From Takakia lepidozioides (Eukaryota > Plantae > Bryophyta): 64,000 bases of DNA. The stretch is taken from contig CM060734.1 of the NCBI GenBank assembly GCA_030704615.1, positions 41,664,001 to 41,728,000 on the forward strand. The letters are read 5' to 3'. Under the pieces are notes generated by a model that was not told the DNA's origin, ran no database searches, and worked only from the letters and a program-made list of their open reading frames with translations. The translations under genes were made by a program, and so were the position numbers. Positions 1 through 63,790 of the stretch are shown in pieces. Numbering within the stretch: the first letter of the stretch is position 1; the number at the start of each line of letters is the position of its first letter.

Positions 1-830
1 TTAAAGCCGGACAGTGTCACCTTTATATGTGTTCTCTCTGCATGCAGCCACGCTGGCCTACTGATTGAAGGAAGACGCTACTTTGATTCCCCGAGTCAAG
101 ATCATGGTGTCACTCCAACAGTAAAGCACTTTGGCTGTATGGTGAACCTTCTTGGACGTGTGGGACAACTGGATGAGGCAGTGGATCTGATTAATAAGAT
201 GCCAATCAATCCAGATGTTGTGGTGTGGAAGACCTTGCTTGGTGCCTGCAGAATCCATGGCAATGTGGAGATGGCTGAACGTGCGGCAACATCTATCCTC
301 AAGTGGGATGAACAGGATGCTGCGACTTATGTGTTGCTATCAAACATGTATGCTGCAGCTGGCAGGTGGGATGATACTGCAAAGGTGAGAAGAATGATGA
401 AGGTCAGAGGGGTTAAAAAGGAGCCAGGTCGCTGCTGCATTGAGGTTGGCAACAGGGTGCACACCTTCGTTGTAGATGACAAGTTGCATCCCATAATTAC
501 AGAAATCCATGCTGAGCTGAGAAGATTGTCTAGGCAGATGAAGGAGGCAGGGTATGTGCCTGACACGCGCTTTGTGTTGCATGATGTGGGGGAGGAGGAA
601 AAGGAATTTTCTCTTTGCCACCACAGTGAGAAGCTGGCCATTGGTTTTGGGCTGATCAGCACGACCCCTAGGACGCCTCTCCGTCTCATTAAGAATCTTC
701 GATGTGTGGTGACTGCCACACCTCCACCAAATTCATCTCAAAGATTGTTGGCCGCGCCATTGTTGTACGGGACGCTAACCGCTTTCACCACTTTGAAGAT
801 GGAATTTGTTCTTGTGGGGATTACTGGTGA
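1..830 (+). pseudogene. 3' part of a PLS-class PPR-E-DYW RNA-editing factor gene (5' end outside the window), frameshifted in the DYW domain
   Basis: Frame 1 is open from base 1 (LKPDSVTFICVLSACSHAGL...E1/E2...KKEPGRCCIEV...HHSEKLAIGFGL...KNLR). One base is missing at ~703-704. The shifted frame reads [41 protein letters not shown] with TGA at 828-830. Confidence 0.9.
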
Positions 831-2365
831 AAGGATGCTTTCTTGGAAACATGCGAGTTTCTTGCTTCATTCATTGATCTGTGTAGCTACTCAGATCATC
901 CACCATTTCCTGAGTATTGACCATGATGTACTGTTGAGTGCACATCCACGGGAAATGATAGTGGGGTCTACCCGGAATAGGTGGGAAGTCAGCCCATAAT
1001 TGCACTTGCCTGAAGGGGTGATATTGGACTGACTTTGGTGACAGTGGATGGAAATCAGAGTGCTGTCCTAATTCTGGGTTTGGGTGGTGGAGCTTCCCCA
1101 AAGCTTGAAGATGGAAGTGAATACGAATTTTAATGAGCTTGATTAGAGTGGCAGCCCTGTGCACAAGTGTGACAGCATCTTACATTTGGACATGTTTGTA
1201 TGTTTCTCGTGGTGCCGCTTTGGATGGAGCCCTTGACTAACTTGCATGAATACTGTCAAAAGCTAGCCTTAACCCACCAAGATCCAATCCCATGGTGGCT
1301 GCTTGAAAGTATAGTGATTGTAAGGGTATTTGGGTGTTTTGTTATTGATTGACGCAGCTTGACTCCCTCACACTATAACAATGGTTTGTGCATGTTGGAG
1401 TTCAAGGTTGGGGGACACAGTCCACCCACTTCAGAACACAATTGCTACATTGGAGATCAGATTTGGGAGCATGTATGAAACAACTGTGCATAGTTTCATG
1501 CAACAATAAGCGATACTGCTAGTGTCCACTGAAGCAGGTCCCTATCGCTGGTGTGACTCCCAGTGTTCTCAGTGACTACTTGAGCTGCCAATCTCAAACA
1601 AGCCGAAAAACTCTCCTAAAATCCACCTCAAGAAAAGGGAGGTCTTTTTCTCTTGCTTCCAGTAACCGCCCAACATCCCAAAAACGAAGCTCTTGGTCGG
1701 TTATGTTGGCTCAATTAATATCAATAAAATTACACCAAACTAAGGAATATGTGGATAATGAGTATTCACTACAGTTTGAAGTCAATCCTTCATATTAAGC
1801 TCAAGCTTTAGACACATCAAGTCATTAAAGATATACGCACTACTCCTTTGGCTCTCATCAGAAGGATTTGTAGTGAGCCGTGGTGCGATGCTCAACTCAA
1901 CTGTTGCGCGAAGGGTTGGGATTCCCATTTCCTCGCATGCGAGTTTTGGGGTAAAGTAATCAGATAGGATTGTAGGGATAGAATTGCTCAAAAAAGTGGA
2001 TGGTTCTCATGCGCTAAAGGAGTGAGCTGTGAATGAAGCACTGAAGATGATGAGAAAGAAGGGTAGTTAGAGACCAGCCGAGGTGGCGCCGCTGAGACTG
2101 TTTTAGACTGAAACAGATTGTAGACCAAGAGAACGCAACGTGGAGATGTAGAGCAGTAAATGTAAACACCGTGGATTGTGTAAGAGGATCATTAACGGGA
2201 TTGGTCACTTAGCCAACGACTGAATCGGATCATGGGTTGTGTGAACGTCATGTATTATGAAGCAATGAGAGAAGTGGAAAGAATAAGCTTAGATTTGTAC
2301 ACCATGTGTCACCTGTCTTTGCGTGGTCATTTCATAGGTGAAAGGTTAGTTGTGAAAGGTTTAGA

Positions 2366-8333: not shown

Positions 8334-11300
8334 ATGGGTAGTACCAAAGTTACCGGGTCCCAGAGTGCAACGGCATTTGGAATTGGTGGGCAGTCTCCTG
8401 CATCGCCCACATGGTGGGGCGGGGATCATACAGTTATGCTGGACAAGTCAACAGAGCTGTCCAGCGCCATGACAAGTCCAAATTATCGGGTGGAACCCTT
8501 CAGTTTCGTTGAGAGTAGCTACAACACTTGCGTGACCGGCGATATCTACTCCACACTGCCAGGGAGGGTGGCTGGTGATATCCACTCCACAATGGGGACC
8601 CCTGTACACGAGGACCAGGTAGGGTGTCCAATTCCTGCATTGAGAGATCTAGGTACAAGTAAAATCTTTGAGCGCACGTGCAAAGCTCTAGATACACATG
8701 ACTAACGAAAGCTGCTCGATCTCATGAGCTTATGAGGTCCATAAACTGCACTTTCGAAGATTTGTTGCTTGGTTGTAGTGCCCGCCAGGATCAATTCTTA
8801 AAACTGAATGGTCCCTGCCGAGATGATCTAAGCTGCAGGAACATATTCTTATACTAATCGCTCATGTAGACAAAAAGATAACTGAGAGAGAATTCTCATA
8901 TACATATATGTTTGAACCACAAGGTTGACTGGTCACCCTTATTCAAATGTTCCAACATTCAGCTTAGAAATTATATATCTTTAGGAAAATTTCAGCATTC
9001 TACATGAGGCTTTCCACCCAAGTAGAGGATCTCTCGTTCGAAGTTGAGTAGTAGTTTTCGGGCTGCTTGTTGGGTCCAGGGCCCAACTTTTTTAGGATGC
9101 GCAAGCTTAGAATGTGAGCTCGCTTGAATGTAGGTGTTTGTGGTTCCCCTGCGCGGGTCAGAGACTCCAATCACACGCGCTAAGCTTCCCGGCATTAACT
9201 CTGGATCTGGGACTCCCGAAGTGCGGTACGAGCTGGAGAACTCAGACGCTGCGAATGTGCAAGAAGCGGCCATACGTATGTACAGAATACTGAAGCAGAA
9301 TAGGTTGGCGGGGGAGGCTGGGAGGGCCCTTCAGGATCTGATTTCTCCAGACTGTGTAACTACAGCCCGGACATTCAACGAGGGGATCCAGGGACCTCCC
9401 GATGACCAGGAGGAACTTGTTGGCATGGACTACATACTCAGGGATGGCATTGTCAATTACTTGCGTGATGTTGCCCGCCTGTCCCCGCCAATTCCACAGC
9501 AGGTACGGCCATTAGACCGTGGTTTCCTCAGGCTCAGGAACACTGAAATATGCTCAATTATCCCATTGGAGTTGTTCGATTTTCGCCACTTGAGGACCTG
9601 ACTTGTGTCATGTAGGCATCAAACCTGAAGTCAGGCGTTTGCTAAACATTACTTACTTCACAGGTGGTGCGATTCAGTGGTATCAATTACACGGCAAAGG
9701 TGACCCCAGCACCAACAGGGTATGAGACCTTTGGAAAGAAAATATTCGACTGCTTCTTTGGGCTTCCTCTCAGGCCGTTTCAGACTGCAAAGCCGCAAGC
9801 CACCACCCTCCAAATTCTTAAGGACATCAGTGGCTACATTATGCCTGGCTCCATGACCCTTCTTCTTGGTCCTCCAGGTACTGTAGAATCCGCAGTAGCA
9901 AACTTGTACCAAATTTTTCGTGATCTCGATCAATGTTTAGATGATTGTTCAGGCTTAAAGAATCAGCTGAAGGGGAAGATAACATTAGTGCATGTATGCA
10001 TGATGAACAATTGATCACTTGATATTCCCTATTTCATCCTAAATGTGTGTTAACCAGTGTGTACATAATGTACACATCCCATCTTTGTCAGACTAGGTCT
10101 CTGAGGGCGCCTCCAGGTACAACCCCCTCCTGTCGATTGACCCTCCTTTGGTGTTGAACTTGCGTTGCGCGCACGCATGCATGCATATGCTGTGACTAAA
10201 GTGCGAGCTCACTCAAATTCACCCTTGCAAAGTTATCAGAGCACTTATACTTAAGATGTTGCTTTGGGGTGGCATATTTCGTGTGCAGGCAGTGGGAAGA
10301 GCTCCCTCCTTCAGGTACAAGCTAAACTTCATAATTTCTCTAAAGGTACTATTCATGTGCAAGCTTAGGCTAGAAAGAGTGATGTCCACTTGTCCTTGTC
10401 CACATTGAGACGTGACCAGTGCTTCCCAGGACGTTTTCCGGGATTGGGTAGCTGGTTACGGACTAACACTCCATGCTTCGGATTCCTTTGTGAAAATGTG
10501 GACTTTGGGCCTGAGTGGAACTTCTGGCGCGTCTTTGGAAACTGTAGCCTCCGATCTCTATCCAACTTTCAAAGCTATCATCTTCCCTAGTTGTGAGAGC
10601 AGCTTTATTCAATAATTCATTGTAATTTGAAGTCTGAACCCAATGAGTGACAGGTTAAATTTCCCAAGTGCTTCTTGCATTAATCTTTCAATCTTCCAGA
10701 GATTTGAAAGTTCTAAGGATCCAAGGCGAGCTCTAATTCAACATGTTAATTTGTGCCTTGGAATGCGTGATAGGTGCTGGCTGGAAGGGCTCGCATAGAT
10801 AGAAACACCAAACTTGATGGCAGGGTCATGTACAATGACCGGGAAGCTTCGGAGGTTCTCCTCACTCTTATCATTGCGTACATCAACGGTCAATTGGACA
10901 AGTTTGTTTCTCTGACCAGAAAGTCCTAGAACAACAACTATCGTTTATGTCCGATTAGTTACGGGCTGTGTACAATTTTAGTTTGAACAGAGATAGATCT
11001 ACACATGAACCCCCCCTCCACTTGCAAGCGCTCCAAAGCCCCAAGTTCCTGAAGAGAGCACATAATTGGTTTTTACAGAGGATTCCTGAGGATTCCTTGC
11101 AAGTATGGCACTCCACTAATGCCAGAGTATTAAAAGGGCGATTGGATGTTCCCTTCTTTAGCGCGGCCACTTGGACTCTGTAGAATATAATGTACATTGA
11201 TGTAGACATCTAGCATTGAGTATCTGGGGATCATGCACTGCAGGCACATGCCATTTCTAACGGTCCACGAGACATTACAGTTCGCTGGAGACTGCACACA

Positions 11301-14300
11301 AGCAATGAAGACTCAAGATTTCACTCCCCAAATGCGCAAGTTCTTTGCCTATGCACTTGTAGAGGGCCAAGATCCCTACCTTGAGTACATCTTGCAGGTA
11401 CGCGATATCCAATTGTTCAAGATTTAATCTCCAAGGATGCCAATAATTTGCTCATGCGTTTGAGGAAGTCGATCTCTATGTCTATAGTACTTAGAAAGGA
11501 ATCGAGGATGGCTTTCAAGATCGAGTGCCCACATTGCATCTCTAATTTTGAACTCGATTTGACACCCCAGGTTCTTGGGCTGAAAAGCATAGAGCATCAA
11601 CTAGTGGGCGCCGGCCAAGATGGAATCACTGAGAACGACAGAGACCGTCTGACAACGGCAGAGATTGCAATGGGATCGTACTCCGTCATGCTGTATGACC
11701 AGCCTTGTAGTCGGCAGGAGTCTCTGGCCACATACGATCTAGTGTACACGTTACGTGCCATCAGTCGCATCCAGCAATGCTCCGCAGTGATGTCGCTAGT
11801 TCAGCTCTCCCCTGAAGTATTCGACCTGTTCGACCGGGTCATACTCTTGGGTGATGGGGAGCTCCTCTATCAAGGTCCTCGCCAGGATGTACTCCACTAC
11901 TTTTCCCACCTCGGGTATGTACAACCTGAACCCGCCGCAGAAGATCTTCTAAGAAAATTGAAGCAATTGTAAGCATCTGTACAGAGGATCGACCAGCAAG
12001 CAAATTTCCAGGGCTATATGTAAGTAGTCACAAACATGTACATATGCATGTGCACACATGTATACTTAAGTACTTGTACTCAAGCTGGAAGCTTTCGGAG
12101 AAGTTTACTTCACTTGCTCAAGCGATCCTCCTAATTCATATAAATTGTAACACATGATGTGGGCTCTCCAACGACGCCTTCCGTCATTACAACATGGAAG
12201 TCTAGAGCGTGTCTAGAGCACTCATGTGTTCATTTCTTGCAGATTTCAAAAGCCGCCCCATGTGGATGCCTGTGACTTTCTTCAAGAGATTGCCGCATGT
12301 GAAGGCCACCAATATATGGAGGCTGGGCGGTCGGCACCCCGCTTGGAGGACCTAGTTCATGCCTATAAATCCTCGGACCTTCACAAGGATGTGATGCGCA
12401 TTGTAAGGAGTGCAGATGTGTTGCACACATTTTGGGTGGAAAGTGAGCCCAATTTGGGCCTGTCAATTTGCAAGCATCCAAAGAACTTCAAGGACCCTAA
12501 CAGATCCTCTGATTCGATTGAAGGAGTCCCAGGTAAACTGCTCCAGCTCAAATTTCGATCTTGATCTAGTTGTACTTTTTGCAATGTCTACAGTACATGT
12601 ATAACTAGAGCTCACCTCGAGCTCACGAGTAAAATATTGGACACCTCAAGTCTGATTCCGCGGGGTGTTTCATGAGGATGAATTAATTGTGAAACCTGTG
12701 ATCACCTCCATATAGCTCTAGAGACAACAATTATTCGCTTCGTTGGAGTCTCAATGATTTATTATTGTTAAGGAATTCATATGCAGACTCCATGCATTTG
12801 GAGTGCATTTGCAACGAAACTCGAACCTCTGAACCTCTGTAACATTCAACCCGAGTCAAATGTCGTGGAAGAAAGCACACTCAAGTTCATGTGTCGATAA
12901 CTAACTGGGTAGAATTGTTTTCTGAGAACTTGGACAGTTTCTGGAATCAAATGAGGCTTTAAAAAGCAACCGGAATTGAAATACGGCCCAGGTTGAATTA
13001 TGTTCAGTGGTTCTTGCAGAGGTGGTGGTAGCACAGTTGTCCAGCAAAGTGGACCACACGCAAGGAATTGAGAGCACCAGCCGCATTCAGGTAGGCAAAG
13101 TTAGCTCACTTGGTTGAACATTGTGTATTTTTTCATCTGGCATCTTTCTCTCCTTCTTAGCTGTCTATTCTACAAGTTCTGATTGCACAGGCTGCGCTAC
13201 ACCCTTTCTACCACTCGATGATATCAAATCATGCGATCTGACTAACAATATTAAAATTTCTAGATCCTCAGGGGAGCTAGTGGCATACTGCTCAAGACGA
13301 TCAGCCAACCTCAAGTTCCTCCACGAACTGCACTAGACATGAATCCCATACTGTATCTCTCTTTCGTGGACCTCATGATCCTTTCTTTCTTGCCACGGTC
13401 GGCATAAATTTTCTTCCTTTCAAGATTTTCTTTCTCCTATCAGGTCAGGCTAATCAAGTGAAGTTCTGGACGTGCCCAGCGTACCAAAGTGTACTCACTA
13501 GGAAAGCATGGAACTGTTTGTGAGCAGGTGGGCGACGTCGTGACAGGCATATCAGTGCCAGGGTTAGACATGCAGTACTTGGCAGTGGGGTCCAGCGACG
13601 ATAAGCGTGTCAGAACTTCAGGGGTGATGAAGATTCTGGCCAATGCCCGTGGCCATGTCCGGCTGCAAGTCGAGCGCCGCCGAGTACGTTCTGCATTGAA
13701 CCTTCTTTTGCCGGGCAGTTTCATTCAAGTCCCCTGAACCAAGTCCGACCCTGGGACCAGTATTCTGTGTCTTTGGCCTGTCGTGACATACCCCATTTAC
13801 ATCAGAGATCCAAGTTCAGTCGTGCAGGAAGTGCCAAACTCTCGAACGGAACGTCTTAGATCAGTGCTGCAATCAAGTGTTTCGTAACACTTGAGTCTTT
13901 GACAGCACTCGGAGCCATTTGTTTTCTAAGTGTAGGGGACCTCATCGAAAACACATGTGACCAGTGCAGCCAAAAATATTTAGGTACCTTGAATGGGTAG
14001 CCAGGGGGGAGCCCGGGTAAAAGATCAGCAATGACGAGACATCACGATTGACTTCCAGGCACAGTCTAAATTGAAATTGTGCTTACCTGACACAGAATCT
14101 CGACGAGGACCTCTACTACGACGACGAGGAAGATACCGATGGGTTAAATGCTCAACAACATTATATCCAAAACTGGCGCGAATCAACCCGTACACTGATT
14201 GCCCGTCAGCTTAAGGTCGCCTATCGCCTGCGGATCCTCATTCTTCTTCGCTTAATGCAGGTAAAACTTCCTCCGTGATCAGGACTACCGCCTTACATAT

Positions 14301-17300
14301 TGGCTGTAGGTCCAATACGATGACGAAGGGCTCCAAGAATATGGAGCTCTAGTTAAATATATGAATTGTATGCGTGGCTCTGGTGGAGGACCCAAAACTC
14401 AAAAAATTTGCGGGCCAAAATGATCTGCAGGCACGAAAGGTAGCTCCTCATTTCAGGCTGCTCTTGAGTTGTATGACATGTAAGTGAATTAGACAAGTTT
14501 GAAGTCTGGACACCTAATGTTGCCAATCCTTGTACGGACAGGTAGTGATTTTGGGAGTGTGCACAGGGACAATTTTCTTCAAGCTTGGCGGGAAACCTGA
14601 TCTGCTGGACATGAATTCTATCCGAGGCCTGGGCTTCGCAGCGACAATGGCACTGTTGATGATCAATCTAGTGCAGCTGCCATTGTATATGATGCAAAGA
14701 CCCATATTCTACAAACAGCGAGATCAGAGATTTTTCAGATCTTCCTCATATGTTCTGGCACACACTGTCGTAAGTCTTCCCCAGTCTATTCTTGAGGTAA
14801 GCAAACACTGGACTTTGAAGGAAAGGAAGATAGCCAAATTTTTTGTAATACGTTAGGTTTAAAAGCCTCAGATCGCTCGGAGGGCAACTTAAGGCCAGTT
14901 AAATTTACTTTTGAAGCAAAGCTCTCTAGAAATCTGGTGAATGGAAGTAATGGGGGCATCCAGTCCGTTTCCTCGTACAGCCTCGTACTCACCTCTTAAC
15001 TAGCACACAAACTTATCCCAGTCACCGTGAACGTCCTAATAAGTGACTTAGGAGAACGTCGTTTCTGACGTTCCTGGTGTAAAAAGAAAAAAAAGTAAGG
15101 AAAACGCTTAGGGGTGGATGATAAAAACATTCATCCAAAATTTGAATGGATGAAAAATCGGGCAACAAACCCTAGATCCCTGCTAGAGCAGATTCTTTCG
15201 AAATCAAGCAACTACTCAGCCTGCGACGAGAGAGAGCGCGTTGCAGGAGGCAGATTCATGCTGCTGGGTGAGGAAAAACACAAGCGAGGTAGCTGTTGAG
15301 TGGCGTGGAATCATTATTGGGTGGCAGCAAGCAACATTCAGCTCAGTCCCACTTGTCTGGAAACTAAACACCTGCACTAGTTCGGACAGCAATGTTGCAT
15401 CCTCTTTTAGGAAGAGAGCACCAAAATTTTCTCCAAGCCTGCACTTGAATGATCATTGGTTGACTGTATCAATGCTCCAGTCCAGCATGAAAAATGTTGG
15501 GAAGTCAAGTGCAAACATTGTGGAAAAGAATTCAAGGTAGGGCCTGTTGGTCTCGTATTAGAGAGCATTATTTCGGAGAAGAGAACATTGAGGTGTGCAC
15601 CAGTGTCAGTGAGGAGATTTTAGCACCTGTGAGGGTAGTTGTGGACAAAATGAACCTAGAGAGAGCAACTACCAAGAGAAAAACAGAGGAAAGAGCCTCC
15701 CTGTCAAGTAAGAAATCATTGAGTGCTTCACAACCTACATTAGCTGCATCTTGGCAAGCTGCAAAGATGCGAAAACAAGATGTAGACCAAGCTGTTGCAC
15801 GTTTCTATTACTCATGTGGGGTTCCTTTCAACTATGCAAGGACCCCATATTTTCAGAGTATGATATCAGCCATTTCGAACTATGGGGCATGTTATAAAGC
15901 ACCTGGTTCAGAGCAGTTACGCACCACTTTGTTGCAGGATGTCAAAAAAGAGTTGAACAAAGACTTACAGCCCATCATAGAGTCTTGGAACAAAACCGGA
16001 TGCACATTGACTTGTGATGGGTGGTCTAATACCACCAATAGACCTCTACTTAATGCACTGTGTGTATCACCCAAAGGAGAGTTTTTCAAGAAGGCTATTG
16101 ATACGAGTGGACAAGAAAAAACAAGTGAGTACATCTCACAACAAATGATAGATGTCATGGAGGAGATAGGGTCTCAAAATGTTGTTCAGGTTGTCACAGA
16201 CAATGCAGCTGTCTGCAAGAGAGCCGGGAGACTCATAGAAGAGAAGTACCCTCACATTACATTTTCAGGATGTACTACACATTGCCTTGATTTGTGACAT
16301 TGGCAACTTAAAGTTGGTTTCCTTTGTCAAAGAAGGAAAGTCTGTGGTGAAGTTTATCACAAATCATCACCGCAGTCAAGCTCTTTTTCAGGAGTATTCT
16401 TTGAGAGACAAAGGAGTGGAGCTCCTCAAACCGGGAGAGAGACGATTTGGGATATTTTTCATCATGCTTAAACGATTGTTGAAGGTGAAAACACCACTTC
16501 AACAAATGATTGTTAGCAGGGAATGGCACAATTGGGATCAATCACGCAGCTCGGAGGGGGAAACAATTGCTGATAACCTACTGGCTCCTAGATTTTGGAA
16601 GAACTTGGAGCTCATTGTTGAGATTTCAGAACCCATCTTCACCTTGTTGCACATGGTTGATTCTAACATGCCAACATGGGAAAATTTTATAAGAAAATGG
16701 ATCAGTTCATTGAAAAAATGCATAGCTTATCAGGGCTGTCAACAGAGAAGAAGGAACAAGTTGTGGACATTTTGTAGGACAGATGGTTATTTATCCACAG
16801 TCCACTGCATTGTGCCGGATTTGTTTTAGACCCCGAGTGGAGAGGAAAGGGTCAAGCGGGAGACAAAGAGGTTATGAAAGAGTTTCGTATAATCCGGGAC
16901 AAATTCTATCCTGATGTTCAAAGTCAGGTTCTAGTGGAGAAGCAACTATCTACATTTTCGTAACATGGAAAGATTATTTTCTGATCCCGCTGTATCATTG
17001 GTGGCCAAAGAAGTTGTAGGTCATATTTGGTGGGAGTCTTATGGGGCTAAAACTCCAGAGCTTGAGAAGATTGCTATTAGAGTTCTTGCTCAAATTACTC
17101 CAACATCTTCATGTGAAAGAAACTGGAGTACATTTGAGTACATTCATTTTAAAAAGCGCAATTGTTTGACTTCTTCTAAAGCAGCTGATATTGTACATGT
17201 TTTTAACAACATTCAATTGCGAGATAAAGTTTTTGACCCTCACTATAAAGAGGAGTTTCTAGACTGGTCGGAGAGTGAGGATAGCGAGGAAGAGATTTGA

Positions 17301-20300
17301 GCTATGTATGTAGCATTATGTGTGCTCATACTGTGATGAATAAAATTCGTTCGTTGCTCATGCAGTTTTCTGTTACGTTTTCCAATTTCCTCTTCATTGA
17401 GAACTCCCGTTTTTTACGTTTTCAAGAATTGTTTTTTTGAACGCGTTTTCCGTTCGCGGTGACTGGGCAACTTATCTAGACCTGTCTCATTGAGAACTAG
17501 AATTCATCGATAAACATCGTATCCAGGGAGCAGCCTATCCCCGTGAAAGTTTTCAAAAGTCCTGCACTGATGTGTTAAAACATTCCAGGCATGTGTATAC
17601 AGCGCTTGTCTCTACTTTGCGGCAAGCCTTTCTACAAAGGGCAATGGGATCCACTTCTTCCAGCACATGTTGGTGATGTGCCTCGTCGCCTTCTTTGGTT
17701 CATCGCTTGTGTTCCTCCTCAGTGCTATTGCACCAATCCTCGAGGCTGCCAATGCCATGTCTGGTATGGAATCTCTCCTTCTTAGCACCATTGTCTCTCT
17801 GTTTCTTTGTTTCGCCAATCTACGGCATCTGGATTCTGGACGTCAGAGCAGAATCTCATCACTCTCTCTCACTTGCGTCCCTTGGCGGATATATGAATTT
17901 CTTTCTTTGAGTCTTTACTCCATTTCTTTTTTTATTCAGGACTCCTTTCTTAAATTGTCCTGTAGATGTAAGGTTTTTCTTTTTTTTTGAGTTGTTTGTG
18001 GGCTGCTGCCTATCGGAGCACCTTCTTATATTTACAGCGCTCGCCATCATGACATGTACATCAAATCCAACTATTCAACAAGCTAATAGCTTATATTTAC
18101 CAGTGTTGAGAATCCTCTCCCTCATTTCCATCTTTACTCCTCTGATCAGGCTTTTTGGTGGCATCATTTGCAGGATTGTTGTTTTCGTTAATTCTGTTGT
18201 TCGCAGGCTTTGTTATCTTCCCATCGAACATGCCTCGATACTGGAGATGGCTGCTCTATGTGAACCCCCTCCACTGGGCAAACCTCCTCTTTTGTATGAT
18301 TCAATATCAATCATACAAGCAACCATGCTCGGAGTTCATTCATGAACTCTATTTCTGCTATACTTATCCCAATGATACAGTTGGCAGTGCCTACCTTAAA
18401 CATTTTGAGATGCAAACTGAAGGGCAATGGTTATGGTTCTCATATTTGATACTGGTGGGTTGGATTCTAGTTGTTAACCTTCTCTCCTACCTGGCCCATA
18501 AGAAACTTCACTTTACCTCTGCGGCCCCCTCACTTCCCCAACAGACGATGTCCAAATCACAAAGTATGTCAAATACAGCGGTACCTGGGCCAATCAGTAG
18601 CAGCTGTGTTGACAAAGCTATGGACGATCCTTCCATATCTGGAATCTCATGGACAACGATGGTGAAGCAAGGCCAAGAGATTGTAACAACAGTGGGAGAA
18701 GACTGGGAGAAAGAGGACCTAGAATTTGGTTCAGATCAAGCAGAGACAGATGTCGTCGAAGCAACCCCTCGACAAGCATGGAAGGCATCACATATCCCGG
18801 TCAAGCCACTAACACTGTCTTTCTACAATCTTGTTTATCGAATTAGGGACCCCCGTGCAGTACAGGAAAGGATATTGTTGAATGGGATATCTGGATATGC
18901 TAAACCTGGCACCATGCTAGCTCTCATGGGGAGCACCAAATGTGGAAAGACAACATTGCTTAGCTGCCTTGCTGGCAGAGTTGAAAAGGGGGAGCTGAAA
19001 GGTGAGATTCTAGTTAATGGATTCAAGCTAAATGCGGCAACATTTTCTCGCTGCTGTGGGTTTGTTGAGAGATTAGATGCACACCAGCCATTCCTGACTG
19101 TTCGGGAGAGCCTAGAATTTAGTGCAAGCCTTCGATTGGGTGACCCTTCCGTAACACCAGAGGAAAGACATGCACATGTCCGACTTATCACGGGCCTCCT
19201 GAATCTATCAAGCGTGGGCAACCAATTGGTGGGGTCCCTAAGGGACGGCACCGGTAGGACATTTGAAATTGCAAAGAAGCTCACCATAGCTGTAGAGCTT
19301 GCAGCAAATCCAAGCATTCTTTTCTTGGATGAACCCACCTCGGGGCTAGACATTGTGGGAGCTCGCAACATCATTCATGGGATACAAACAATTGCAAAAA
19401 CCGGACGTACGATAATCACCACAATCCAAAATCCAAGCTCGCGAATGCTTAGTGCCTTCAACAGTGTGATCATCTTGAAGCAGGGTGGAGAACAAGCTTA
19501 TTTTGGTCCTGTAGAGTGGAATTGCAGCCAGCTCCTGGAATATATCAGCTCCATACCCAAAGTGCCAAAGTACGACCAAAAGCAAAACCCAGTAACTTTT
19601 GTGTCAGACTTGCTTGGGGAAGGAATCAAAAGGAGACAACCACTCCAAAATTTTGCTATCATCTATGAAAACAGCCCACTGGCAGGCCTCAATGCCGAAG
19701 AGTTGACCAGGCTTCGCAAACAAGTGAAGAAAAACGCACCGAAACCAGTGGAGTCAAGGTTTGCAGCACCCTATACAAGGCAGGCTGCAATGGTGTTCCT
19801 CCGGACACAACGGTTTCTCTATAGGAACGTTTCATACACGTTTGGTAAGGTGACAGGGTCTGTAGCTCTTGGATTGGTGATGGGCTCACTTTACTACCAA
19901 ATTGGCCAGAGCAATACCTACACGCTTACATCACGCTCTCTCTTCATCTATATTCAGGTACGAATCATTATAATCATGCTTTCTTTTTATCCCACAATCA
20001 ACCATTCTCAACGAAAAGTTTTTTCCTCCTTCACTTATGCAGCCACTACTTAAACAAGATGAAAGGAGCAAAAGAGGTTGTTGAGTAGGCATGCATCAAA
20101 GAAACCAAATCTACAGCACACGAGTTCCTTCTTGATAGTCACAGATTTGTTAGCTGCATCTATTGAGTCATATTGGCTAGGATATTACACATGACAGGAC
20201 CCAACCGACTCATTCATTGCACTTTGCAGGTGGTGCTTATCGGCGTTGTCACATCCACCAACGTCATCCCACAAATTGGCACGGATCGGCTTGCTTACTT

Positions 20301-20946
20301 TCGGGAGAAGAGAGCAGGGATGTACGCTCCCATTTTCTACCCGGTCTCATGGGCAGTGGCAGAAATCCCCTATGTTCTACTCTCAACTCTAGTATTTGTC
20401 GCCATAGCTAATGGGATGGCAGGCATAGCAACCGACACAGTGCTACACTTTGTGGAGTACTGGCTATGCTTGTTTGTCTTCACACTCTCAGTCACATACT
20501 TCGCTATGTTGTTGACCATAGCGACCTCAGCTCCCATGGTGGCCGCATTTGCTGTCTCCATCATCACCTCTATTTGGATAGCCACATCCGGCGTGGTTGT
20601 ACCAAAGCTTCGAATACCCTCCAGTTATACTTGGCTCTTCTGGGCCAACCCATTCCAGTATGTCACCAACAGTCTCACCTCCATTGGCTTCTACTGCGAC
20701 ACAAACACACCTGCTTGCTTGGCATGTGTGCCCAAAGTTCCGTGCCCACATTGCCCGTGTGCTCGCTTGGCAGATTTGCCCGCACAAACGTTTGCATGGG
20801 ACCGACTGAGATACACGCGCTCGCTGGAATACAGTCGCATCCCACTTGATTTCGCAGCACTGGCGGGCATGAGCACCATTTTTGCTCTGCTTGCCTTTAT
20901 CTCCTTTGTGGCATTCAAGCACAACAGCAAACCCGTTGTACACTAA
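8334..20946 (+). CDS. Full-size ABCG (PDR-type, NBD-TMD-NBD-TMD) transporter, ~1710 aa, with an inserted PDZ-like domain and degenerate ATPase motifs
   Basis: 15 phase-compatible GT-AG exons: 8334-8618, 9134-9502, 9664-9877, 10289-10314, 10774-10901, 11244-11397, 11571-11914, 12243-12532, 13020-13090, 13528-13683, 14096-14260, 14542-14796, 17589-17763, 18174-19957, 20230-20946 (5133 nt). PDR hallmarks: LLLGPPGSGKS, FDLFDRVILL, RPIFYKQRD, LTIAVELAANPSILFLDEPTSGLD, REKRAGMY. Exon 1 and the start codon are the least certain parts. Confidence 0.88.
15017..17467 (+). mobile_element. hAT DNA transposon with a frameshifted DUF659/hAT-dimerisation transposase, in intron 12 of the ABCG gene
   Basis: 17-bp TIR CCCAGTCACCG(T/C)GAACG at 15017-15033 and 17451-17467; 8-bp TSD aaacttat/caacttat (7/8). 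ORF pieces 15494-16297, 16287-16829 and 16965-17300 contain CDGWS, VQVVTDNA and WWESYG...SSCERNWSTF. Confidence 0.92.
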
Positions 20947-32890: not shown

Positions 32891-33172
32891 GGCTATGCTT
32901 GTTTGTCTTCACACTCTCAGTCACATACTTCGCTATGTTGTTGACCATAGCGACCTCAGCTCCCATGGTGGCCGCTGTCTCTATCATCACCTCTATCTGG
33001 ATAGCCACATCCGGCGTGGTTGTACCAAAGCTTCGAATACCCTCCAGTTATACTTGGCTCTTCTGGGCCAACCCATTCCAGTATGTCACCAACAGTCTCA
33101 CCTCTATACGCTAGCTGGACTACAATCGCATCCCACGACTTCGCAGCACTCGCGGGCGGCATGAGCACCATT
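32891..33172 (+). pseudogene. Duplicated fragment of the last ABCG exon
   Basis: 32891-33104 is nearly identical to 20462-20681 apart from a 6-nt deletion and a few substitutions. After a ~130-nt gap, 33105-33172 matches ~20811-20881 less closely. Confidence 0.92.
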
Positions 33173-34101
33173 TAGAATTTATCATGTGTTTCCGAAGAAT
33201 GAAACAAGCTTGATGAAGAAGGGGCGAAATGGGATCATGTTTCAAACGCCTGTAATCGGAGGAATGAGTGAAGGTGGCCCCAAGTGAAGTTGATGATTCC
33301 ACAGCTGTCTGCAGAGAGATTTTGCTGGAGGTGAATGCTGTATTTGGCAGATTGGGTGAGGTGGCACAAAAATATAAAGAGAAATTAAGCACTTGGGATT
33401 CGGCTGAATATGAGAGCCTTTCTGAGATCTTACAATGCATTTCAATACGTTGCTCTCTCCTTCCCCGGTTACTCCTATTTGTTTATCAGTGTGATCAAGG
33501 TTCTGTATACAAAAAAGTTGAACAAGGGGAAGGAAAGGGCCTTTGGAGAGCAGTTTTTCCTCTTAAGCAACTACGATGGTGCCACCGCTTTAATTATTTC
33601 TCATCTTCTCCAAAAAATCCTTGACTGCCAGGCCTTCCCCAATAGGAGGTAACATAGATGAGAAATCTCCCCCTGGATTCATCTTGGCCACACCAAGGTT
33701 GTTTGCTTTGTTGGTATGGGGTTTCACAACAGTGGAAAATTCTGCTTTGACTGCTTGTACAACCGGTGGGGTGTGTCTGATGATTTAAGTGGCCTGCATA
33801 CACCATAGAGTGTGAATTCAAATACCAAGGATGGTCCCTGTTTGTGGATACCGACACTCGTCAATCACTAGCTTGGATCTGGTACCAACCGATCAGAAGA
33901 GAGGGGTTTCCTCTCTCTTTTGGGGGGATTACTCAGGTTTGCACATAGATTTCACTTCATAGAATCTGCCTAACAGCGAACATTTGATTCATGGGAGCTT
34001 TATACGGTAGTTAAAGGCACATCTGTGTCAATATAGGTACAACCAGCTTCAGCTTTTGGTTGCACCTGAAGTATGTTTATTCAGCTTTTCTCTGCGTGTG
34101 T

Positions 34102-40100: not shown

Positions 40101-43100
40101 TCCTCATGTGGCGAGAGAAACCAAGAAATGAACTTTACCATGTCCACAAGAGAATAGAGAGAGAGAGACATACTGTCAGGGGCGGCTGCAGCACCAGGAG
40201 AGGGAACAGGTACCAGGGCTGCAGCGCTTTTCTGCAAACCACAGAAGACAAAAGAGAATCAGGTACTTGTGTTTTAAATCACCCATTTAATCAAAGGAAC
40301 CAAAGATACCACAGACAGGGTATTTGCAACCATGGTTTGATTATGACTACACCTCACAGGGGAAACACATGAAGATGAAGTGAAGGGAGATTCAACAGGT
40401 TCTTTGTGGTTAGGATGTACTCATAAGACATTTGCAATAGCCTTGTGACCATAGACCCAGCACCCAGTTTGGGTGGAACAAGAGGGACAGACATTTGTGA
40501 AGGGCTCACTCCAGTAGTGGGACTGACCTTGATGCAAATAATTAGTTGGGGCTTTCAGATGTCCTCTACAAGGCCCTTCACACAAGCATCAATCTGCCGT
40601 GTGTGAGCTGCCCAGCAATTAGACCCCAACAGGGCCAGGGCTCTAGGCTCAGCCTTAAGATTTTGAAAGTTGGTGAACAGAGGTGCAGGACAATGTTCTT
40701 GATGGTCCTGAAGAGAGTTGCTCTCTGATGAGAATACCCCTGACAAAGCAAATATATCCAAATATCTCCATACATACAATTAAAGGTGACCAACAGAGAA
40801 GTACTGAGAAAATTTGATCGACGGTAGAGGGGTTTTCAGAAGAGAACCAGAAAAAAACAGCAAAGAAAAGAAAAACAGATGCAAGAAAAACAAAAAAAGG
40901 ACAAAATAGACACGGATACAAACAGAACGAACACTGATCAATTTTGAACCCGTAAACTGAGAATAGCGGTATAGACTTGGTGAATGTCTCTCACCAATCC
41001 ATTGACCAAGAACAACAACATGTATGGTAGTGACAAACCACCATCACTTCCCCACTACCTTCGTCAGCTCCCCACAAAGCATGGATAGATTGTACTCATA
41101 AGACGTTGTTTGCCGTAGCCTTGTGGCCATTGACCCCGCGCCCAGTTTGAGCGGAAACAAAAGGGACGGAACCTACCTCTGTCAGGGGCTGACGTTGGTA
41201 GTAAGACTTACCTTCATATAAAGAATTAATCCGGGTTTTCCAGATATCCTCTAGAAATCCCTTCACACAAGCATCAATCTGCTGTGTGTGATTTGCCCAA
41301 AAACTAGGCCTCAGGAGGGTTCTCTTGATAGATTTGAAGAGAGCGTCTCTTTGGTGAGAGAACCCCGGACACTGTATCAGAAAATGAATACTGTCTTCAG
41401 GTTGCCCACACAACGGGCAATTGCACTCTCCCTTTCCTCTCTGCTTCTGTTTGCTGTTCAAAGGTAGGCTTCCTGCCCTGAGTTTAAATTTCAGTCTAGT
41501 GCCGAGAGTGGGTAGACCCTTGAGGTCATCCAAGATGTCCTCCCCCATGTCACTGACTGGAAACAAGTTCAGGGAAGTTTTCTGCCTAACTTCATTTTCA
41601 TCAGACAATCTCGTGGCAACAGACATGGCTCTGGACACTACAGCCTCTAAGTCAGATTTATCCAGCAGCGGTTCCAGGTCCAGGTCCTTGAGAATCTCTT
41701 CTACTCTCTTCTGCCAGGACTTAGCCTGTTTGACAGGGCGGTCCTGTTTCCAAGATATAGAGTCGATTAACTTAGGATATCTGGTGTTGGACGTATGTTG
41801 CAGCTGACCAAATCTTCTGACCTTGAATTCATCTCGTCGGGAGCTTAAGGACGGAATGCCAAACTCACCCCAACAGCCACATTGGCTGTTTTGGAGCATG
41901 CTGACATACACTCCTTAAGCACCCCCGCTTGAATGGATTCTAAAGACTTAGCCTGGTTGGAGTTATCAACCCATATTGCAGATCTGTACTCCAAGGCAGG
42001 TCTAATAATGCGACAAAGCATGGTGTTCTTAACCTCAGAGTTGACCCCTCTGCAGTGGAAAACTTTAGTGAGCCCCAGAGCTTTGCCCTTGCCAGTTTGA
42101 ACAACTTTCCGCATCCCAATTACAATTGGAGGAAAACTCAATGCCCAGGTAAGTGTAGGAAGGGATCGGGATCTCTTGGCTACCCCACTGCCACTTAAGA
42201 TCACTTCCTCCCTCTCCTCTGTCGTTGAATGCTACCACTGCACATTTGCTGACATTAGCCTCTAGCCCCCAAAGATCAAAGTATCTCTTCGCGCAATCAA
42301 TCAACTCCTGGAGATTGGTTGGAGTCTCCCCTATGCCTGCGAAGTCATCCGCAAACATAAGGGCTGGTATGGTGGTATCACCCACCCTTTGAGGAGCGTG
42401 ATGCCACGGTAGTTCCCCGGTTCTTCTCGGTCACCCTTCTTGTGTAGATTGACAATGACCCCCTGTCGCCAGCGAAAGGGGATCTTTTCAGTCTTCCAGA
42501 TAAGGTTAAAGAGGAGAACTAGGGCCTCTATCATGGGATCGCCACCGTGCTTGATAAGCTCGTTGACAATTCCATCAGGTCCACCAGCTTTATATCCGTT
42601 TAAATGTTCAATTGCTTCCACAATCTCAGAAGAACTAATGGGAGCATTATAAGCCATTGAAATATACTCCAGTTCATCAGGGCTGTTTTGAATCATAGGA
42701 ACAGTTTTTCCAACTGTGTCCCTCCATTCAGCAGAAGACCCCTCACTGTTAGACCTAGAAGTTCTGCCAAGGATACTGTAGTGAGTTTCAAAGGTTTTGA
42801 CAATGTCAACCGATGAAGTCACCACTGCACCTTTAGTAGTCTTCAGCGCTTGTACTTGCTGACCGTTTTTCGGCTTGTACAAACGTTGAAAGGCCAACCA
42901 GAATTTCTTGTCATTACCACCAAGGTGGTTTGAGTTTATTTCACTGTATAACTTGTCCCAGTATAATTTCTTCTGAGACCTAACAAGCTGATTGATATCT
43001 TTACGGAGCTGGTAGAGTACCTCGCCCACAATTCTCTGTTGGTTTTGAAATTGCAGCACTCTTTATAGAGGGCTCATCTCTCAGCTATCTTGAGTTTAAT

Positions 43101-46100
43101 CTCATTGGTCCACCAATTAACAGCTCTACCGCAGACAATTAGTTTCCTCCCAATGATCTTGTCAGCCACAGAGGAAACGAAACTCTCCCAAGAGTCCACT
43201 GCTCTTTCGACTTCATTTCTTGCGTTGTCAGAGCGAGACTGAAGTTCTTGGAGCGATTGGACAAAATGAGGGAGAGCCTCTTGCAAGGCCTGGACATACT
43301 CAGCCTTGACCTCCTCATTATGGAATTTTTCTATGCGCCACTTCCGAATCAAACATTTCACAGATCTCTTGGTGTTGGGAAAATACCTTTTGATCTCAGT
43401 CCAAACCAGGAAGTGGTCAGAGGTACCAATATCAGTTCTGTCGATCAACACATTGGCACACTGGGGAAACAAATTTTTGTCCATTATGATATAGTCCACA
43501 ATGGAACGTTTCCCAGTTTGGGATTTCTCACGAGTCCACTGCACTTGGTCACCTCTTGTCCTGTTATTCAAGGTCAAAAGCTGAAGCTCTTCCAGACAGT
43601 TAATTAACCGTCTGCCATTAGAATTCAGCTCGTCCTCACCAAAAGGCCCAATGATATCGTCCTGATGGAGACCTTTGCCCACCCGGGCATTGAAGTCACC
43701 CAATAGAACCACCTGACCTTTGGCAAGGAACGAAGCACAGTCCAGCTTTACATGTTCGAAGGCTTTGTCTGCGTCAACACTAAGGGTCCCCTCTGTGGGC
43801 ATGTATACACACCCCACAAAGAGGTCCTTCGTATTCACGCCCTTCAGATTCAGAGATACTATGCTCATACCTCAAACCCTTGTTGATAATTTCACAATTA
43901 TCAAACAAGAAATCGAGGACAAAGAATCCAACCCCTTTTTGGCCGCGTTTGGCAGAGGCAGCCTTGAGAGTACACATCTTACCCTTGAAAGCATGGATAG
44001 AATGTACTCATAAGACGCTGTTTGCCGTAGCCTTGTGGCCATTGCCCCCGCTCCCAGTTTGAGTGGAACACAAAGCATGGATAGATTGTACTCATAAGAC
44101 GTTGTTTGCCGTAGCCTTGTGGCCATTGACCCCGCGCCCAGTTTGAGCGGGAACAAAAGGGACAGAACCTACCTCTGTCAGGGGCTGACGTTGGTAGTAA
44201 GACTTACCTCCATATAAAGAATTAATCCGGGTATTCCAGATATCCTCTAGAAATCCCTTCACACAAGCATCAATCTGCTGTGTGTGATTTGCCCAAAAAC
44301 TAGGCCTCAGGAGGGCCTGGGCTTTTGGCTCAGCCTCGAGACTTTCAAAGTTGGTAAACTGGGGTACAGGCACAATTCCCTTAATAGATTTGAAGAGAGC
44401 GTCACTTTGGTGAGAGAACCCCGGACAGTGTATCAGAAAATGAATACTGTCTTCAGATTGCCCACACAACGGGCAATTGCACTCTCCCTTTCCTCTCTGC
44501 TTCTGTTTGCTGTTCAAAGGTAGGCTTCCTGCCCTGAGTTTAAATTTCAGTCTAGTGCCGAGAGTGGGTAGACCCTTGAGGTCATCCAAGATGTCCTCCC
44601 CCATGTCACAGACTGGAAACAAGTTCAGGGAAGTTTTCTGCCTAACTTCATTTTCATCAGACAATCTCATGGCAACAGACATGGCTGAGGACACTAAAGC
44701 CTCTAAGTCAGATTTATCCAGCAGGGTCAAGACTTGCGGATCCAGGTCCAGGTCCTTGAGGATCTCTTCTACTCTCTTCTGCCAGGACTTAGCCTGTTTG
44801 ACAGGGCGGTCCTGTTTCCAAGATATAGAGTAGATTAACTTAGGATATCTGGTGTTGGGCATATGTTGCAGCTGACCCCACCATCTGACCTTGAATTCAT
44901 CTCGTCGGGAGCTTAAGGACGGGACGCCAAACTCACCCCGAACAGCCACATTGGCTGTTTTGGAGCATGCTGACATACACTCCTTAAGCACCCCCACTTG
45001 AATGGATTCTAGAGACTTAGCCTGGTTGGAGTTATCAACCCATATAGCAGATCCGTACTCCAAGGCAGGTCTAATAACGCGACAAAGCATGGTTTTCTTA
45101 ACCTCAGAGTTGACCCCTCTGCAGTGGAAAAATTTAGTGAGCCCCAGAGCTTTGCCCTTGCCAGTTTGAACAACTTTCCGGATATGTGCATCCCAATTAC
45201 AATTGGAGGAGAACTCAACGCCCAGGTAAGTGTAGGAAGGGAGGACTGGGATCTCTTGGCTACCCCACTGCCACTTAAGATCACTTCCTCCCTCTCCTCT
45301 GTCGTTGAATGCTACCACTGCACATTTGCTGACATTAGCCTTTAGCCCCCAAAGATCAAAGTATCTCTTCGCGCAATCAATCAACTCCTGGAGATTGGTT
45401 GGAGTCTCCCCTATGCCTGCGAAGTCATCCGCAAACATAAGGGCTGGTATGGTGGTATCACCCACCCTTAACCCAAATCCCTCACTTTCCACATCCTCGA
45501 GGAGTTTATTGATGAAAACATTGAAGAGCAGAGGGGAGAGAGTACATCCTTGAGCTACACCTTGGTCTATGTCAAAGAAGTTGGACTTCTGTCCATTAAC
45601 AGTGACACAGCTTTTGGTGTGAGCATACAAGTTGTGGACAACTCTCCACATCTTTCCCTTGATCCCACAAGACCAGAGGCGGAACCATAGGCCATCTCTC
45701 CACACTGTGTCATAAGCCTTTTTGACATCCAGGAAAAAGACATAAGTGGGTTTCCCTTCTTTTTTCCTTCCCTGGATAATCTGACTTAGAGTGAAGATAT
45801 GATCCACACAGCCCCTGTTTTGCCGAAAGCCAGCTTGGCCTTCGTGGAAACAACCTCTAGACTCCAGATCAACCTCGAGACGAGTACTTATAACTCTGCA
45901 GAATGTCTTGCCAACAGCATTGAGGAGCGTGATGCCACGGTAGTTCCCCGGTTCTTCTCTGTCACCCTTCTTGTATAGATTGACAATGACCCCCTGTCGC
46001 CAGCGAAAGGGGATCTTTTCAGTCTTCCAGATAAGGTTAAAGAGGAGAACTAGGGCCTCTATCATGGGATCGCCACCGTGCTTGATAAGCTCGTTGACAA

Positions 46101-62200: not shown

Positions 62201-63790
62201 CTGATTCAACCCTGCCATCCTGCATGATTAAAAATTCTTAGCCACAAACCTTGACACTCAAAACTCCCAAACAATACCTTGGACCGAAGTCAGCGTAAAT
62301 AAGAGCCTCGTCCCCTTATAGATACCAACCCCTTTCAAGGTTTGCAGAGAGTTCACCTCTAAGCTCCTACATACCTCAAAGCAAGATCTCTTCATGAGGA
62401 TAGGCTCATTGGTACATGTGAATAAGGTTTCTGTGTTGGTTACCCTTCCATATCAAAGCATCTCAGTTCACACTTGCAACACATATCGACTCAGACACAA
62501 GCTGCAATACCATTACTGTCCTTGCATGGACTGCATTTCTGAAAACCACATTCACCTTCACCCCGACAAAAATTACAAGATCAACATCTCATTCAAAAAC
62601 AGAAGAACCCTGCTCCCTGGAACATGTGATGGGTGGCTCACAGTCTCCTCTCTTGAAAATTTTACTGAGAGTACTAAGGAGAACACCTCAAAACTAATAG
62701 AGAAAGATCAGAATCTACATCTGTAAGGCAAGTGGAACTGTCATACTGGAAGCGCCCCACCAAATCCCCTCCACCATTGCTTGTCACGGGATTTTGCCTG
62801 GCTGCTTCCAACTCCAATTGACCATCTACCCAGACCATGCTCTTGTAGTGATCAATCCTCAGTGCTTCACTGGTTTTCTTGTGTGTGAAATACAGTTGTC
62901 TAGGACAGACCTGCACCCACATTCATCACTGCCGACCTTGGCTCCAAAACAAGATTGACTAGATTTTTTGGACATGTTTTCAGGTGGTTTTATATGTGTT
63001 TTTTGTGTCAGGGGTACCCTTTTTCAAAAGTCAACGAAAAGGCACTGGGCATTTAATGGTTGAAGATGCACCTCACCAACAGGCATTTAACCAGGTGTTG
63101 CAAAGACTAAATTGCCAAGTCTTCTTTTCCATCCAAAATCTACACCTTGTCAAACTCTCTGGTTTCTGGAAGACTGTTTCCATCTTTGAAAGTTCTTTAT
63201 CTTGGATGTGGTATACTCCAGTGGAGAGAGAGAGAGAGAGAGAATCATTACTTTGCGAGAATATGTCTGCTTCTACCGCAACGTAACTAGCACTCACCTT
63301 ATTGCCTTGATTGTCCCACAATGGACTGAGGTTTGAAATATATCTGTTCCACAGCTTCTCCTCGTCTGCATTTTGGCTTTTCGGAAAATGGCATGTGTTA
63401 GCAACTTGCTTCCTGAATGTGACCACGGTTGGCCACCCAATTTCTTCATGTCCAGGTGGCCTCGTTGGTCAACCCCCATAAACCTCATCCTCCTGTACTC
63501 CTCACAATCAGCTTGACACTGTTCCAAACAACCCTTAATCCAATGCAGTTTGGGAAATGCAGAGGACCATGTACATTGTGTAGCCCACACCGTCTTGAAG
63601 CTTTAAGCCCAGAGCCGGACTGGCAGGCCACGTAGCACCGGCGAAGCTGAGGGGTCCCCGAGATGCCTCGAAAACGTGTGGAGAAGGCAGGATCTCTCAC
63701 AGATGTCATGCATAATGTATGAGCTTCCATGGTTGCTCCTTCTCCAACCCTTTTGCCAAACCCACTTGCCACTGACCTGGAGAGGGCCAT
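59285..63790 (-). CDS. PLS-class PPR-E-DYW RNA-editing factor with an N-terminal OSB-type PDF motif; ~1129 aa
   Basis: Exons 63790-63568 (donor tentative), 63365-63298, 62910-62747 and 62219-59285. The 977-aa ORF has PLS repeats, E1/E2, HGE...CGGC and terminal DYW. Exons 2-3 give EEKLWNRYISNLSPLWDNQGNK|VCPRQLYFTHKKTSEALRIDHYKSMVWVDGQL. Confidence 0.88.

What the first reader, a model, noticed from the sequence alone, without database searches (positions are those of the whole stretch)
12421..13683. Canonical-order PDZ-like domain inserted between NBD1 and TMD1 of a PDR/ABCG transporter
Seen: exons 8-10 splice in frame to LHTFWVESEPNLGLSICKH...EVVVAQLSSKVDHTQGIESTSRIQVGDVVTGISVPGLDMQYL...TSGVMKILANARGHVRLQVERR, followed by an acidic stretch (DEDLYYDDEEDTD) before the usual pre-TMD1 helix (YIQNWRESTRTLIARQ). 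This adds about 110 aa where PDRs have only a short linker. Known: NLGLSI (GLGF carboxylate-binding loop), RIQVGDVVTGI (L..GD.I..V) and ILANARGHVRLQVER (alphaB-betaF) follow the non-permuted PDZ order. The familiar plant PDZs (CtpA, Deg proteases) are circularly permuted, and ABC transporters such as CFTR normally bind PDZ proteins rather than contain one. Inference: a transporter with a built-in cytosolic peptide-recognition module for scaffolding, sensing or self-regulation. Its own C-terminus is KPVVH.
Basis: partly seen in the sequence, partly recalled or inferred. Interest (0 to 1): 0.85.

Follow-up and report, generated by a model that had tools for sequence, protein, structure and literature searches.

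The report
Plant ABCG transporter with built-in PDZ
An old, little-studied family of plant membrane pumps carries an unannotated protein-docking (PDZ-fold) domain inside it, and the branch holding this gene has lost key residues for burning ATP, so it may act as a sensor or scaffold rather than a pump.

Summary
Confirmed and extended. Exons 8-10 (12421-13683) encode 113 aa in frame between NBD1 and TMD1 of a full-size ABCG. Three flanking or internal splice joints appear in spliced contigs; the fourth matches a Selaginella intron in position and phase. The insert adds about 110 aa over canonical PDRs (201 vs 83) and marks one green-plant clade (Chlorokybus to angiosperms, probably Cymbomonas), likely the published 'V1-type' ABCGs. 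AlphaFold models of two orthologous inserts match only non-permuted PDZ domains (top Z 8.4 and 8.9; all 50 rows PDZ in four PDB searches), including plant LSF1. Pfam scores stay below cut-off, and no paper found reports the fusion. Corrections: LSF1 is already a non-permuted plant PDZ; C-termini are not conserved ligands, so self-binding is unlikely; the loop Arg/Lys and class-I His are absent. Beyond the finding: in this gene's subclade (44 proteins) the NBD1 Walker B Glu is always Gln and the signature Gly of the normally active site is always lost, while ATP-binding residues of NBD1 are kept. Best reading: an ATP-binding, hydrolysis-poor scaffold or sensor with a partner-docking PDZ (about 50%). 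The scan noted four similar loci in this genome (untested).

The parts
9134..20946 (+). Full-size ABCG gene, NBD1-PDZ-TMD1-NBD2-TMD2, at least 14 exons, about 1620 aa from 9134; first exon probably near 8400-8618, not fixed
   Evidence: Pfam ABC_tran, ABC2_membrane, PDR_assoc on exon ORFs; tblastn exon map from homologues; open frame
9868..10305 (+). NBD1 Walker A (GPPGSGKSS, split by an intron), intact
   Evidence: Lys kept in 43 of 44 subclade members
11622..11705 (+). NBD1 signature degenerate (ITEND in place of I/VSGGQ/E) and Walker B with Glu replaced by Gln (YDQP)
12243..12532 (+). Exon 8: end of NBD1, then PDZ strand A (12421-12441), GLGF-like loop and strand B (NLGLSI, 12451-12468), variable loop
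   Evidence: 5' joint in spliced contig
13020..13090 (+). Exon 9: PDZ strand C and helix-A region (GIESTS)
   Evidence: 3' joint in spliced contig; 5' intron position shared with Selaginella
13528..13683 (+). Exon 10: PDZ GD motif, strands D and E, lengthened helix B, strand F
   Evidence: both joints in spliced contig; secondary structure of orthologue models
14096..14260 (+). Exon 11: acidic spacer (14102-14140) and pre-TMD1 connecting helix
14542..18500 (+). TMD1 (exons 14542-14796, 17589-17763, start of 18150-19958)
   Evidence: Pfam ABC2_membrane
18929..19438 (+). NBD2: Walker A GSTKCGKTT and Walker B LDEP kept, signature GRTFE degenerate, H-loop TIQNP without His
20231..20946 (+). Last exon: TMD2 and C-terminus ending KPVVH (not a conserved PDZ ligand)

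Best explanation
The insert is a divergent PDZ-fold domain in non-permuted order. It was gained once, in the NBD1-TMD1 linker of a green-plant full-size ABCG lineage, and has been kept since. This gene belongs to the land-plant subclade in which both ATP sites have decayed. The protein most likely binds ATP at NBD1 but hydrolyses little or none, and works as a membrane-anchored scaffold or ligand/nucleotide sensor whose cytosolic PDZ docks a partner protein next to the helix that couples NBD1 to the membrane domain. Shown: spliced in-frame insert, conservation, single clade, motif decay. Predicted: PDZ fold (about 95%). Inferred: loss of hydrolysis, partner docking, signalling or scaffolding role.
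For: Fold: two AlphaFold models of orthologous inserts (pLDDT 65 and 71) match only PDZ domains, top Z 8.4 and 8.9 over 81-91 residues, Foldseek probability about 1.0. Profile aligns end to end with Scribble PDZ2, E 0.01. Conservation: the window insert is 40-57% identical to fern, Selaginella and seed-plant orthologues, close to TMD1 at 48-57%. All insert-bearing proteins fall in one clade with SH-aLRT 97-100 on trees that exclude the insert. Motifs in 44 subclade members: NBD1 Walker A Lys 43, Walker B Asp 44, catalytic Glu to Gln 44, signature Gly 0, NBD2 H-loop His in register 2; canonical PDRs and the intact algal/liverwort sister group keep all of these. Glu-to-Gln blocks hydrolysis, and NBD2 plus the NBD1 signature form the only active PDR site (PMC8421411; PMC8544900).
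Against: No biochemical data. The window's own NBD2 keeps Walker A GKT and Walker B DE, so slow turnover at site 2 is possible; 35 of 44 members have a His one position downstream that might substitute. Both membrane domains are as conserved as the rest, which also fits a retained transport path. The PDZ also exists in members with intact sites, so it did not arise as a result of ATPase loss. Models are of orthologues, have moderate confidence, and Foldseek E-values are above 0.001. No partner is identified.
Confidence: 0.5

Rival explanations
1. It is still a transporter or an ATP-gated facilitator with slow or single-site turnover, and the PDZ is a regulatory or targeting module that controls activity or membrane position.
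For: Both TMDs are conserved at 48-61% across vascular plants. Window, Cryptomeria and Adiantum keep NBD2 Walker B DE. A sister group has the PDZ with fully canonical sites (Chlorokybus, Closterium, Spirogloea, Riccia).
Against: The signature Gly of the active site is lost in 44 of 44; angiosperms further change NBD2 Walker A Gly (kept in 9 of 44) and Walker B Asp (Glu in 35 of 44), and grasses lose the Walker A Lys.
Confidence: 0.3
2. The PDZ fold does not bind C-terminal peptides. It serves as a structural part that packs on the NBDs or joins a complex through another surface, as the LSF1 PDZ helps form the BAM1-MDH platform. This is compatible with either role of the ABC core.
For: Loop basic residue is Glu in 40 of 49, helix-B first position is Ala, Leu or Thr, fifth position is bulky Tyr or Phe in 39 of 49, helix B is lengthened. 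The most invariant residues (Trp in strand A, Tyr in strand E, Gln-x-Glu-Arg in strand F, Gly-Asp) lie off the groove. LSF1 has the highest query TM-score (0.57) among Foldseek rows; its role is from PMC12892837.
Against: The G-L/I-G-L loop and strand B are well conserved (G41, L/I49, G40, L45 of 49), as expected for a working groove, though these are also fold residues.
Confidence: 0.15
3. The PDZ binds the transporter's own C-terminus (KPVVH) for self-regulation.
For: Both parts should be cytosolic in ABCG topology (established knowledge).
Against: C-terminal four residues of 58 members vary freely and usually end in a polar or charged residue.
Confidence: 0.03
4. The insert is a mis-spliced or chance sequence, or the gene is a decaying pseudogene.
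For: The exon 8/9 joint was not seen in reads; run X1 is only guessed to be RNA; an intron holds a transposon.
Against: Open frame of 1623 aa, four spliced joints, shared intron position, and more than 60 homologous inserts.
Confidence: 0.02

Closest known systems
V1-type full-size ABCGs of Cho et al. (PMC8359288)
   Same: Early-diverged green-plant full-size ABCGs of charophytes, mosses, Selaginella and Amborella, separate from canonical PDRs; my clade holds Chara, Selaginella and Amborella proteins. The identification rests on taxon pattern, not on shared accessions.
   Different: That paper mentions no PDZ (0 occurrences) and found no other angiosperm members; here many magnoliids, eudicots and grasses have one.
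Canonical plant PDR / full-size ABCG (AtABCG29-43 type) and yeast Pdr5
   Same: NBD-TMD-NBD-TMD order, same Pfam domains.
   Different: Linker 83 aa, no PDZ; one active ATP site with S-G-G signature, Walker B Glu and H-loop His. Only 20-41% identity by domain; separate clade.
PDZ-like domain of Arabidopsis LSF1 (PDB 8j5d)
   Same: Plant, non-permuted, colinear match Z 7.7, rmsd 2.8 over 87 residues, 21% identity; scaffold role in a complex.
   Different: Soluble plastid starch protein; no significant sequence match found, so direct kinship is untested.
Metazoan PDZ domains (ZO-1, MAGI, NHERF1, MUPP1, Scribble)
   Same: Same fold and order, Z 8-9; GLGF-like loop.
   Different: Basic loop residue and class-I His missing, longer helix B and strand B-C loop. 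These domains bind ABC transporter tails from separate proteins (NHERF with CFTR, PDB 6rqr); here the domain is inside the transporter.
Sulfonylurea receptors and CFTR (from my own knowledge)
   Same: ABC folds repurposed from pumping to regulation or gating.
   Different: ABCC family, keep one active ATP site, contain no PDZ domain.

Membership tests
PDZ fold | Six-strand, two-helix beta-sandwich | tested here: met
   Orthologue models match only PDZs, top Z 8.4 and 8.9. Helix A is poorly modelled and strand E is short.
PDZ fold | Non-permuted order, with the loop and strand B near the N-terminus | tested here: met
   Colinear alignments to Scribble PDZ2 and to ZO-1, MAGI, NHERF1, LSF1; no permuted HtrA or CtpA PDZ in the top 50 structural rows.
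PDZ fold | x-hydrophobic-Gly-hydrophobic carboxylate loop | tested here: met
   G-L/I-G-L in most members, N-L-G-L in the window.
Canonical peptide-binding PDZ | Arg or Lys four residues before the loop | tested here: not met
   Glu in 40 of 49 and in the window, aligned to Scribble Arg.
Class I PDZ | His at the first position of helix B | tested here: not met
   Ala 31, Leu 8, Thr 6 of 49; window Thr.
Pfam PF00595 PDZ | Score at or above the gathering cut-off, 23.2 bits | tested here: not met
   About 17 bits for Fagus and Selaginella inserts; best E 0.0034, 11 of 59 members hit at E up to 1; none on window exon pieces.
Canonical peptide-binding PDZ | Binds a C-terminal peptide by strand addition | not testable with these tools
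   Needs a binding assay.
Full-size ABCG | NBD-TMD-NBD-TMD order with ABC2_membrane domains | tested here: met
Canonical plant PDR clade | Groups with AtABCG29-43-type proteins | tested here: not met
   Separate, well-supported clades.
Active PDR ATPase | One composite site with NBD1 S-G-G signature plus NBD2 Walker A, Walker B Glu and H-loop His | tested here: not met
   Window signature T-E-N and H-loop Gln; signature Gly in 0 of 44.
V1-type ABCG (PMC8359288) | Early-diverged clade of charophytes, mosses, Selaginella, Amborella | tested here: inconclusive
   Taxa agree but the paper's accessions were not compared.

The most novel reading that the evidence does not exclude
A green-plant ABCG lineage gained a PDZ domain, and its land-plant branch became a hydrolysis-dead, receptor-like ABC protein that senses a ligand or ATP and signals or scaffolds through the PDZ. 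It is present from lycophytes to crops such as cassava, coffee, tea and millets, and was overlooked because the main model plants seem to lack it.
Probability: 0.35. Interest if true: 0.88.

Novelty: new variant of a known kind. Interest (0 to 1): 0.72.

Why it matters
ABC transporters are normally the clients of PDZ proteins, and non-permuted PDZ domains are rare in plants, with solved examples in plastids. A PDZ built into the cytosolic face of an ABCG is an architecture that I found neither annotated nor published. The clade offers a natural series from intact pump with PDZ (algae, liverwort) to doubly degenerate protein with PDZ (this gene, ferns, seed plants), which makes the pump-to-regulator transition in an ABC protein testable. 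Public records name these proteins as ordinary ABCG or PDR members, which would mislead functional work in many crops and trees.

Tried and rejected
Pfam and PDB sequence searches on single window exons gave nothing: the domain is split over three exons and divergent. Following the operators' note, the joined spliced model was never sent to any database or folding tool; it was built only inside local scripts to check the frame and to compare with proteins already fetched, and orthologues stood in for folding. So the window's own domain was not folded. ESM Atlas feature scores of 0.76-0.81 point to PDZ clusters but are under 0.9, leads only. Foldseek gave no E under 0.001. Five literature searches pairing PDZ with ABCG, ABC transporter or plant-lineage terms found no paper describing the fusion; the library lacks most subscription papers. 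Self-binding of the C-terminus rejected on conservation. A lineage-specific insertion rejected. Chara P0026 scores no insert, but its NBD1 model is garbled, so it is uninformative. The mixture-model tree did not finish; trees are LG+G4 quick searches. No sequence match to LSF1 was obtained, so the donor of the domain is unknown. Absence from Arabidopsis, legumes and Solanaceae was not tested; they simply did not appear in capped hit lists.

Full report
Observation. The finding lies in a plus-strand, intron-rich full-size ABCG gene at about 9134-20946. The surrounding window has DYW-type PPR genes, so the source is a land plant. Exons 12243-12532, 13020-13090, 13528-13683 and 14096-14260 have GT-AG ends and join without stops; dropping exon 9 breaks the frame. 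Intron-less contigs from one public run show the joints on both sides of exon 10, after exon 11 and before exon 8. The 8/9 joint was not covered, but Selaginella has a phase-1 intron at the same codon. The whole model is an open frame of 1623 aa from 9134.

The insert is a family trait. A search with the NBD2 exon found close relatives in Selaginella, Diphasiastrum, Taxus, many angiosperms, Riccia, Closterium, Spirogloea and Chlorokybus. Further searches added Cryptomeria, Adiantum, Amborella, magnoliids, eudicots and grasses. More than 60 of these carry a homologous insert, and none has a PDZ family precomputed. The span from the end of NBD1 to the pre-TMD1 helix is 176-204 aa in complete models against 83 in canonical plant PDRs. 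The window insert is 40-57% identical to fern, Selaginella and seed-plant orthologues, about as conserved as TMD1. On trees that leave the insert out, all carriers form one clade apart from canonical PDRs. The chlorophyte Cymbomonas has a linker of the same length that aligns colinearly with the profile, weakly (P 0.0014, probability 17%), so the gain may predate the chlorophyte-streptophyte split. The window gene sits outside the fern plus seed-plant group, which points to a lycophyte or bryophyte source. The clade probably equals the V1-type of PMC8359288, which reports no PDZ.

The insert has a PDZ fold in non-permuted order. Single sequences score below Pfam's cut-off (about 17 bits against 23.2). 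A 59-sequence profile aligns end to end with Scribble PDZ2 (E 0.01) and its hit list is dominated by PDZ domains. AlphaFold models of the Cryptomeria and Selaginella inserts (mean pLDDT 65 and 71) show strand, strand, strand, strand, short strand, long helix, strand. In Foldseek and in the independent VIA search of 48,161 chains, all 50 listed rows are PDZ-containing entries, top Z 8.4 and 8.9. Z of this size is only modest taken alone, but the uniform hit list and the agreeing profile alignment make the assignment strong. The plant LSF1 PDZ matches colinearly (Z 7.7, 87 residues, 21% identity; highest query TM-score, 0.57), so non-permuted plant PDZs are already known.

What the groove looks like. 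The loop reads G-L/I-G-L in most members and N-L-G-L here. The basic residue that precedes the loop in Scribble is Glu. The first position of helix B is Ala, Leu or Thr rather than His, the fifth is usually Tyr or Phe, and the helix is lengthened in this subclade. A class I specificity is therefore excluded; a hydrophobic or non-canonical mode remains. C-terminal residues of 58 members are unconserved, which argues against self-binding.

The ATP sites. PDR proteins hydrolyse ATP at one site, made of NBD2 and the NBD1 signature, and a Walker B Glu-to-Gln change blocks hydrolysis (PMC8421411; PMC8544900). The PDZ clade has three tiers. Chlorokybus, Closterium, Cymbomonas, one Spirogloea and one Riccia protein keep every canonical residue. 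A second group (Spirogloea, Riccia, Diphasiastrum paralogues) has lost the signature and mostly the H-loop. In the window's subclade of 44 proteins the NBD1 Walker A Lys (43) and Walker B Asp (44) are kept, the catalytic Glu is Gln in all 44, the signature Gly is never present, and the NBD2 His is in register in only 2 (35 have a His one place later). Angiosperms further erode NBD2 Walker A and B. The window gene keeps NBD2 GKT and DE but has a T-E-N signature and no H-loop His. I found this independently and then saw that the first stage had noted it for this gene (s1-461939).

Mechanism. Strong conservation over the age of vascular plants, with the hydrolytic residues lost and the ATP-binding residues of NBD1 kept, fits a protein that binds nucleotide but does not pump in the usual way. 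The PDZ sits just before the connecting helix that links NBD1 to TMD1, on the cytosolic side, where it could report conformation to a partner or hold a complex at the membrane. I put this scaffold/sensor reading at about 0.5, a slow or gated transporter with a regulatory PDZ at 0.3, and a purely structural PDZ at 0.15. Because intact members also carry the PDZ, its first role was as an accessory to a working pump. All functional steps are inference.

Novelty. Both parts are known kinds; the fusion and the double degeneration appear unreported in the literature I could search, which lacks most subscription journals. I file it as a new variant of full-size ABCG with a divergent PDZ-fold domain, not as a canonical peptide-binding PDZ and not as a canonical PDR. 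The scan noted four similar loci elsewhere in this genome; I could not check them.

Noticed in passing
window 15017-17467: hAT-like DNA transposon remnant in the intron between TMD1 exons: broken transposase frames, 11-bp terminal inverted repeat and a near-perfect 8-bp target duplication.
   Followed up: partly
window 32891-33173: A 96%-identical partial copy of the ABCG last exon (20462-20681, plus a short second piece), 12 kb downstream, with deletions; probably a captured or duplicated fragment.
   Followed up: partly
window 18520-18790: The TMD1-NBD2 linker is long, Ser/Thr-rich and acidic, a possible regulatory or phosphorylation region.
   Followed up: no
window 20640-20760: Cys-rich extracellular loop in TMD2; several of its cysteines are nearly invariant across the PDZ clade.
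   Followed up: no
window 139-999, 55849-57507, 59285-62218: PLS/DYW-type PPR genes, as for RNA-editing factors; 42331-47004 holds LINE-like reverse transcriptase and endonuclease frames on the minus strand.
   Followed up: no
P0005, P0006, P0269 (Selaginella): Fast-evolving Selaginella paralogues have a degenerate PDZ loop and further motif decay, suggesting loss of groove function after duplication.
   Followed up: no
ESM Atlas fold search, row 1: A diatom-rich cluster of 343-aa 2Fe-2S ferredoxin-family proteins matches the PDZ model (TM 0.55); a lead for an algal PDZ family related to the donor.
   Followed up: no
whole genome: The scan index lists 5084 windows; at 64 kb each that is about 325 Mb, which from memory matches the moss Takakia. 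A guess only, consistent with the tree position outside ferns and seed plants.
   Followed up: no
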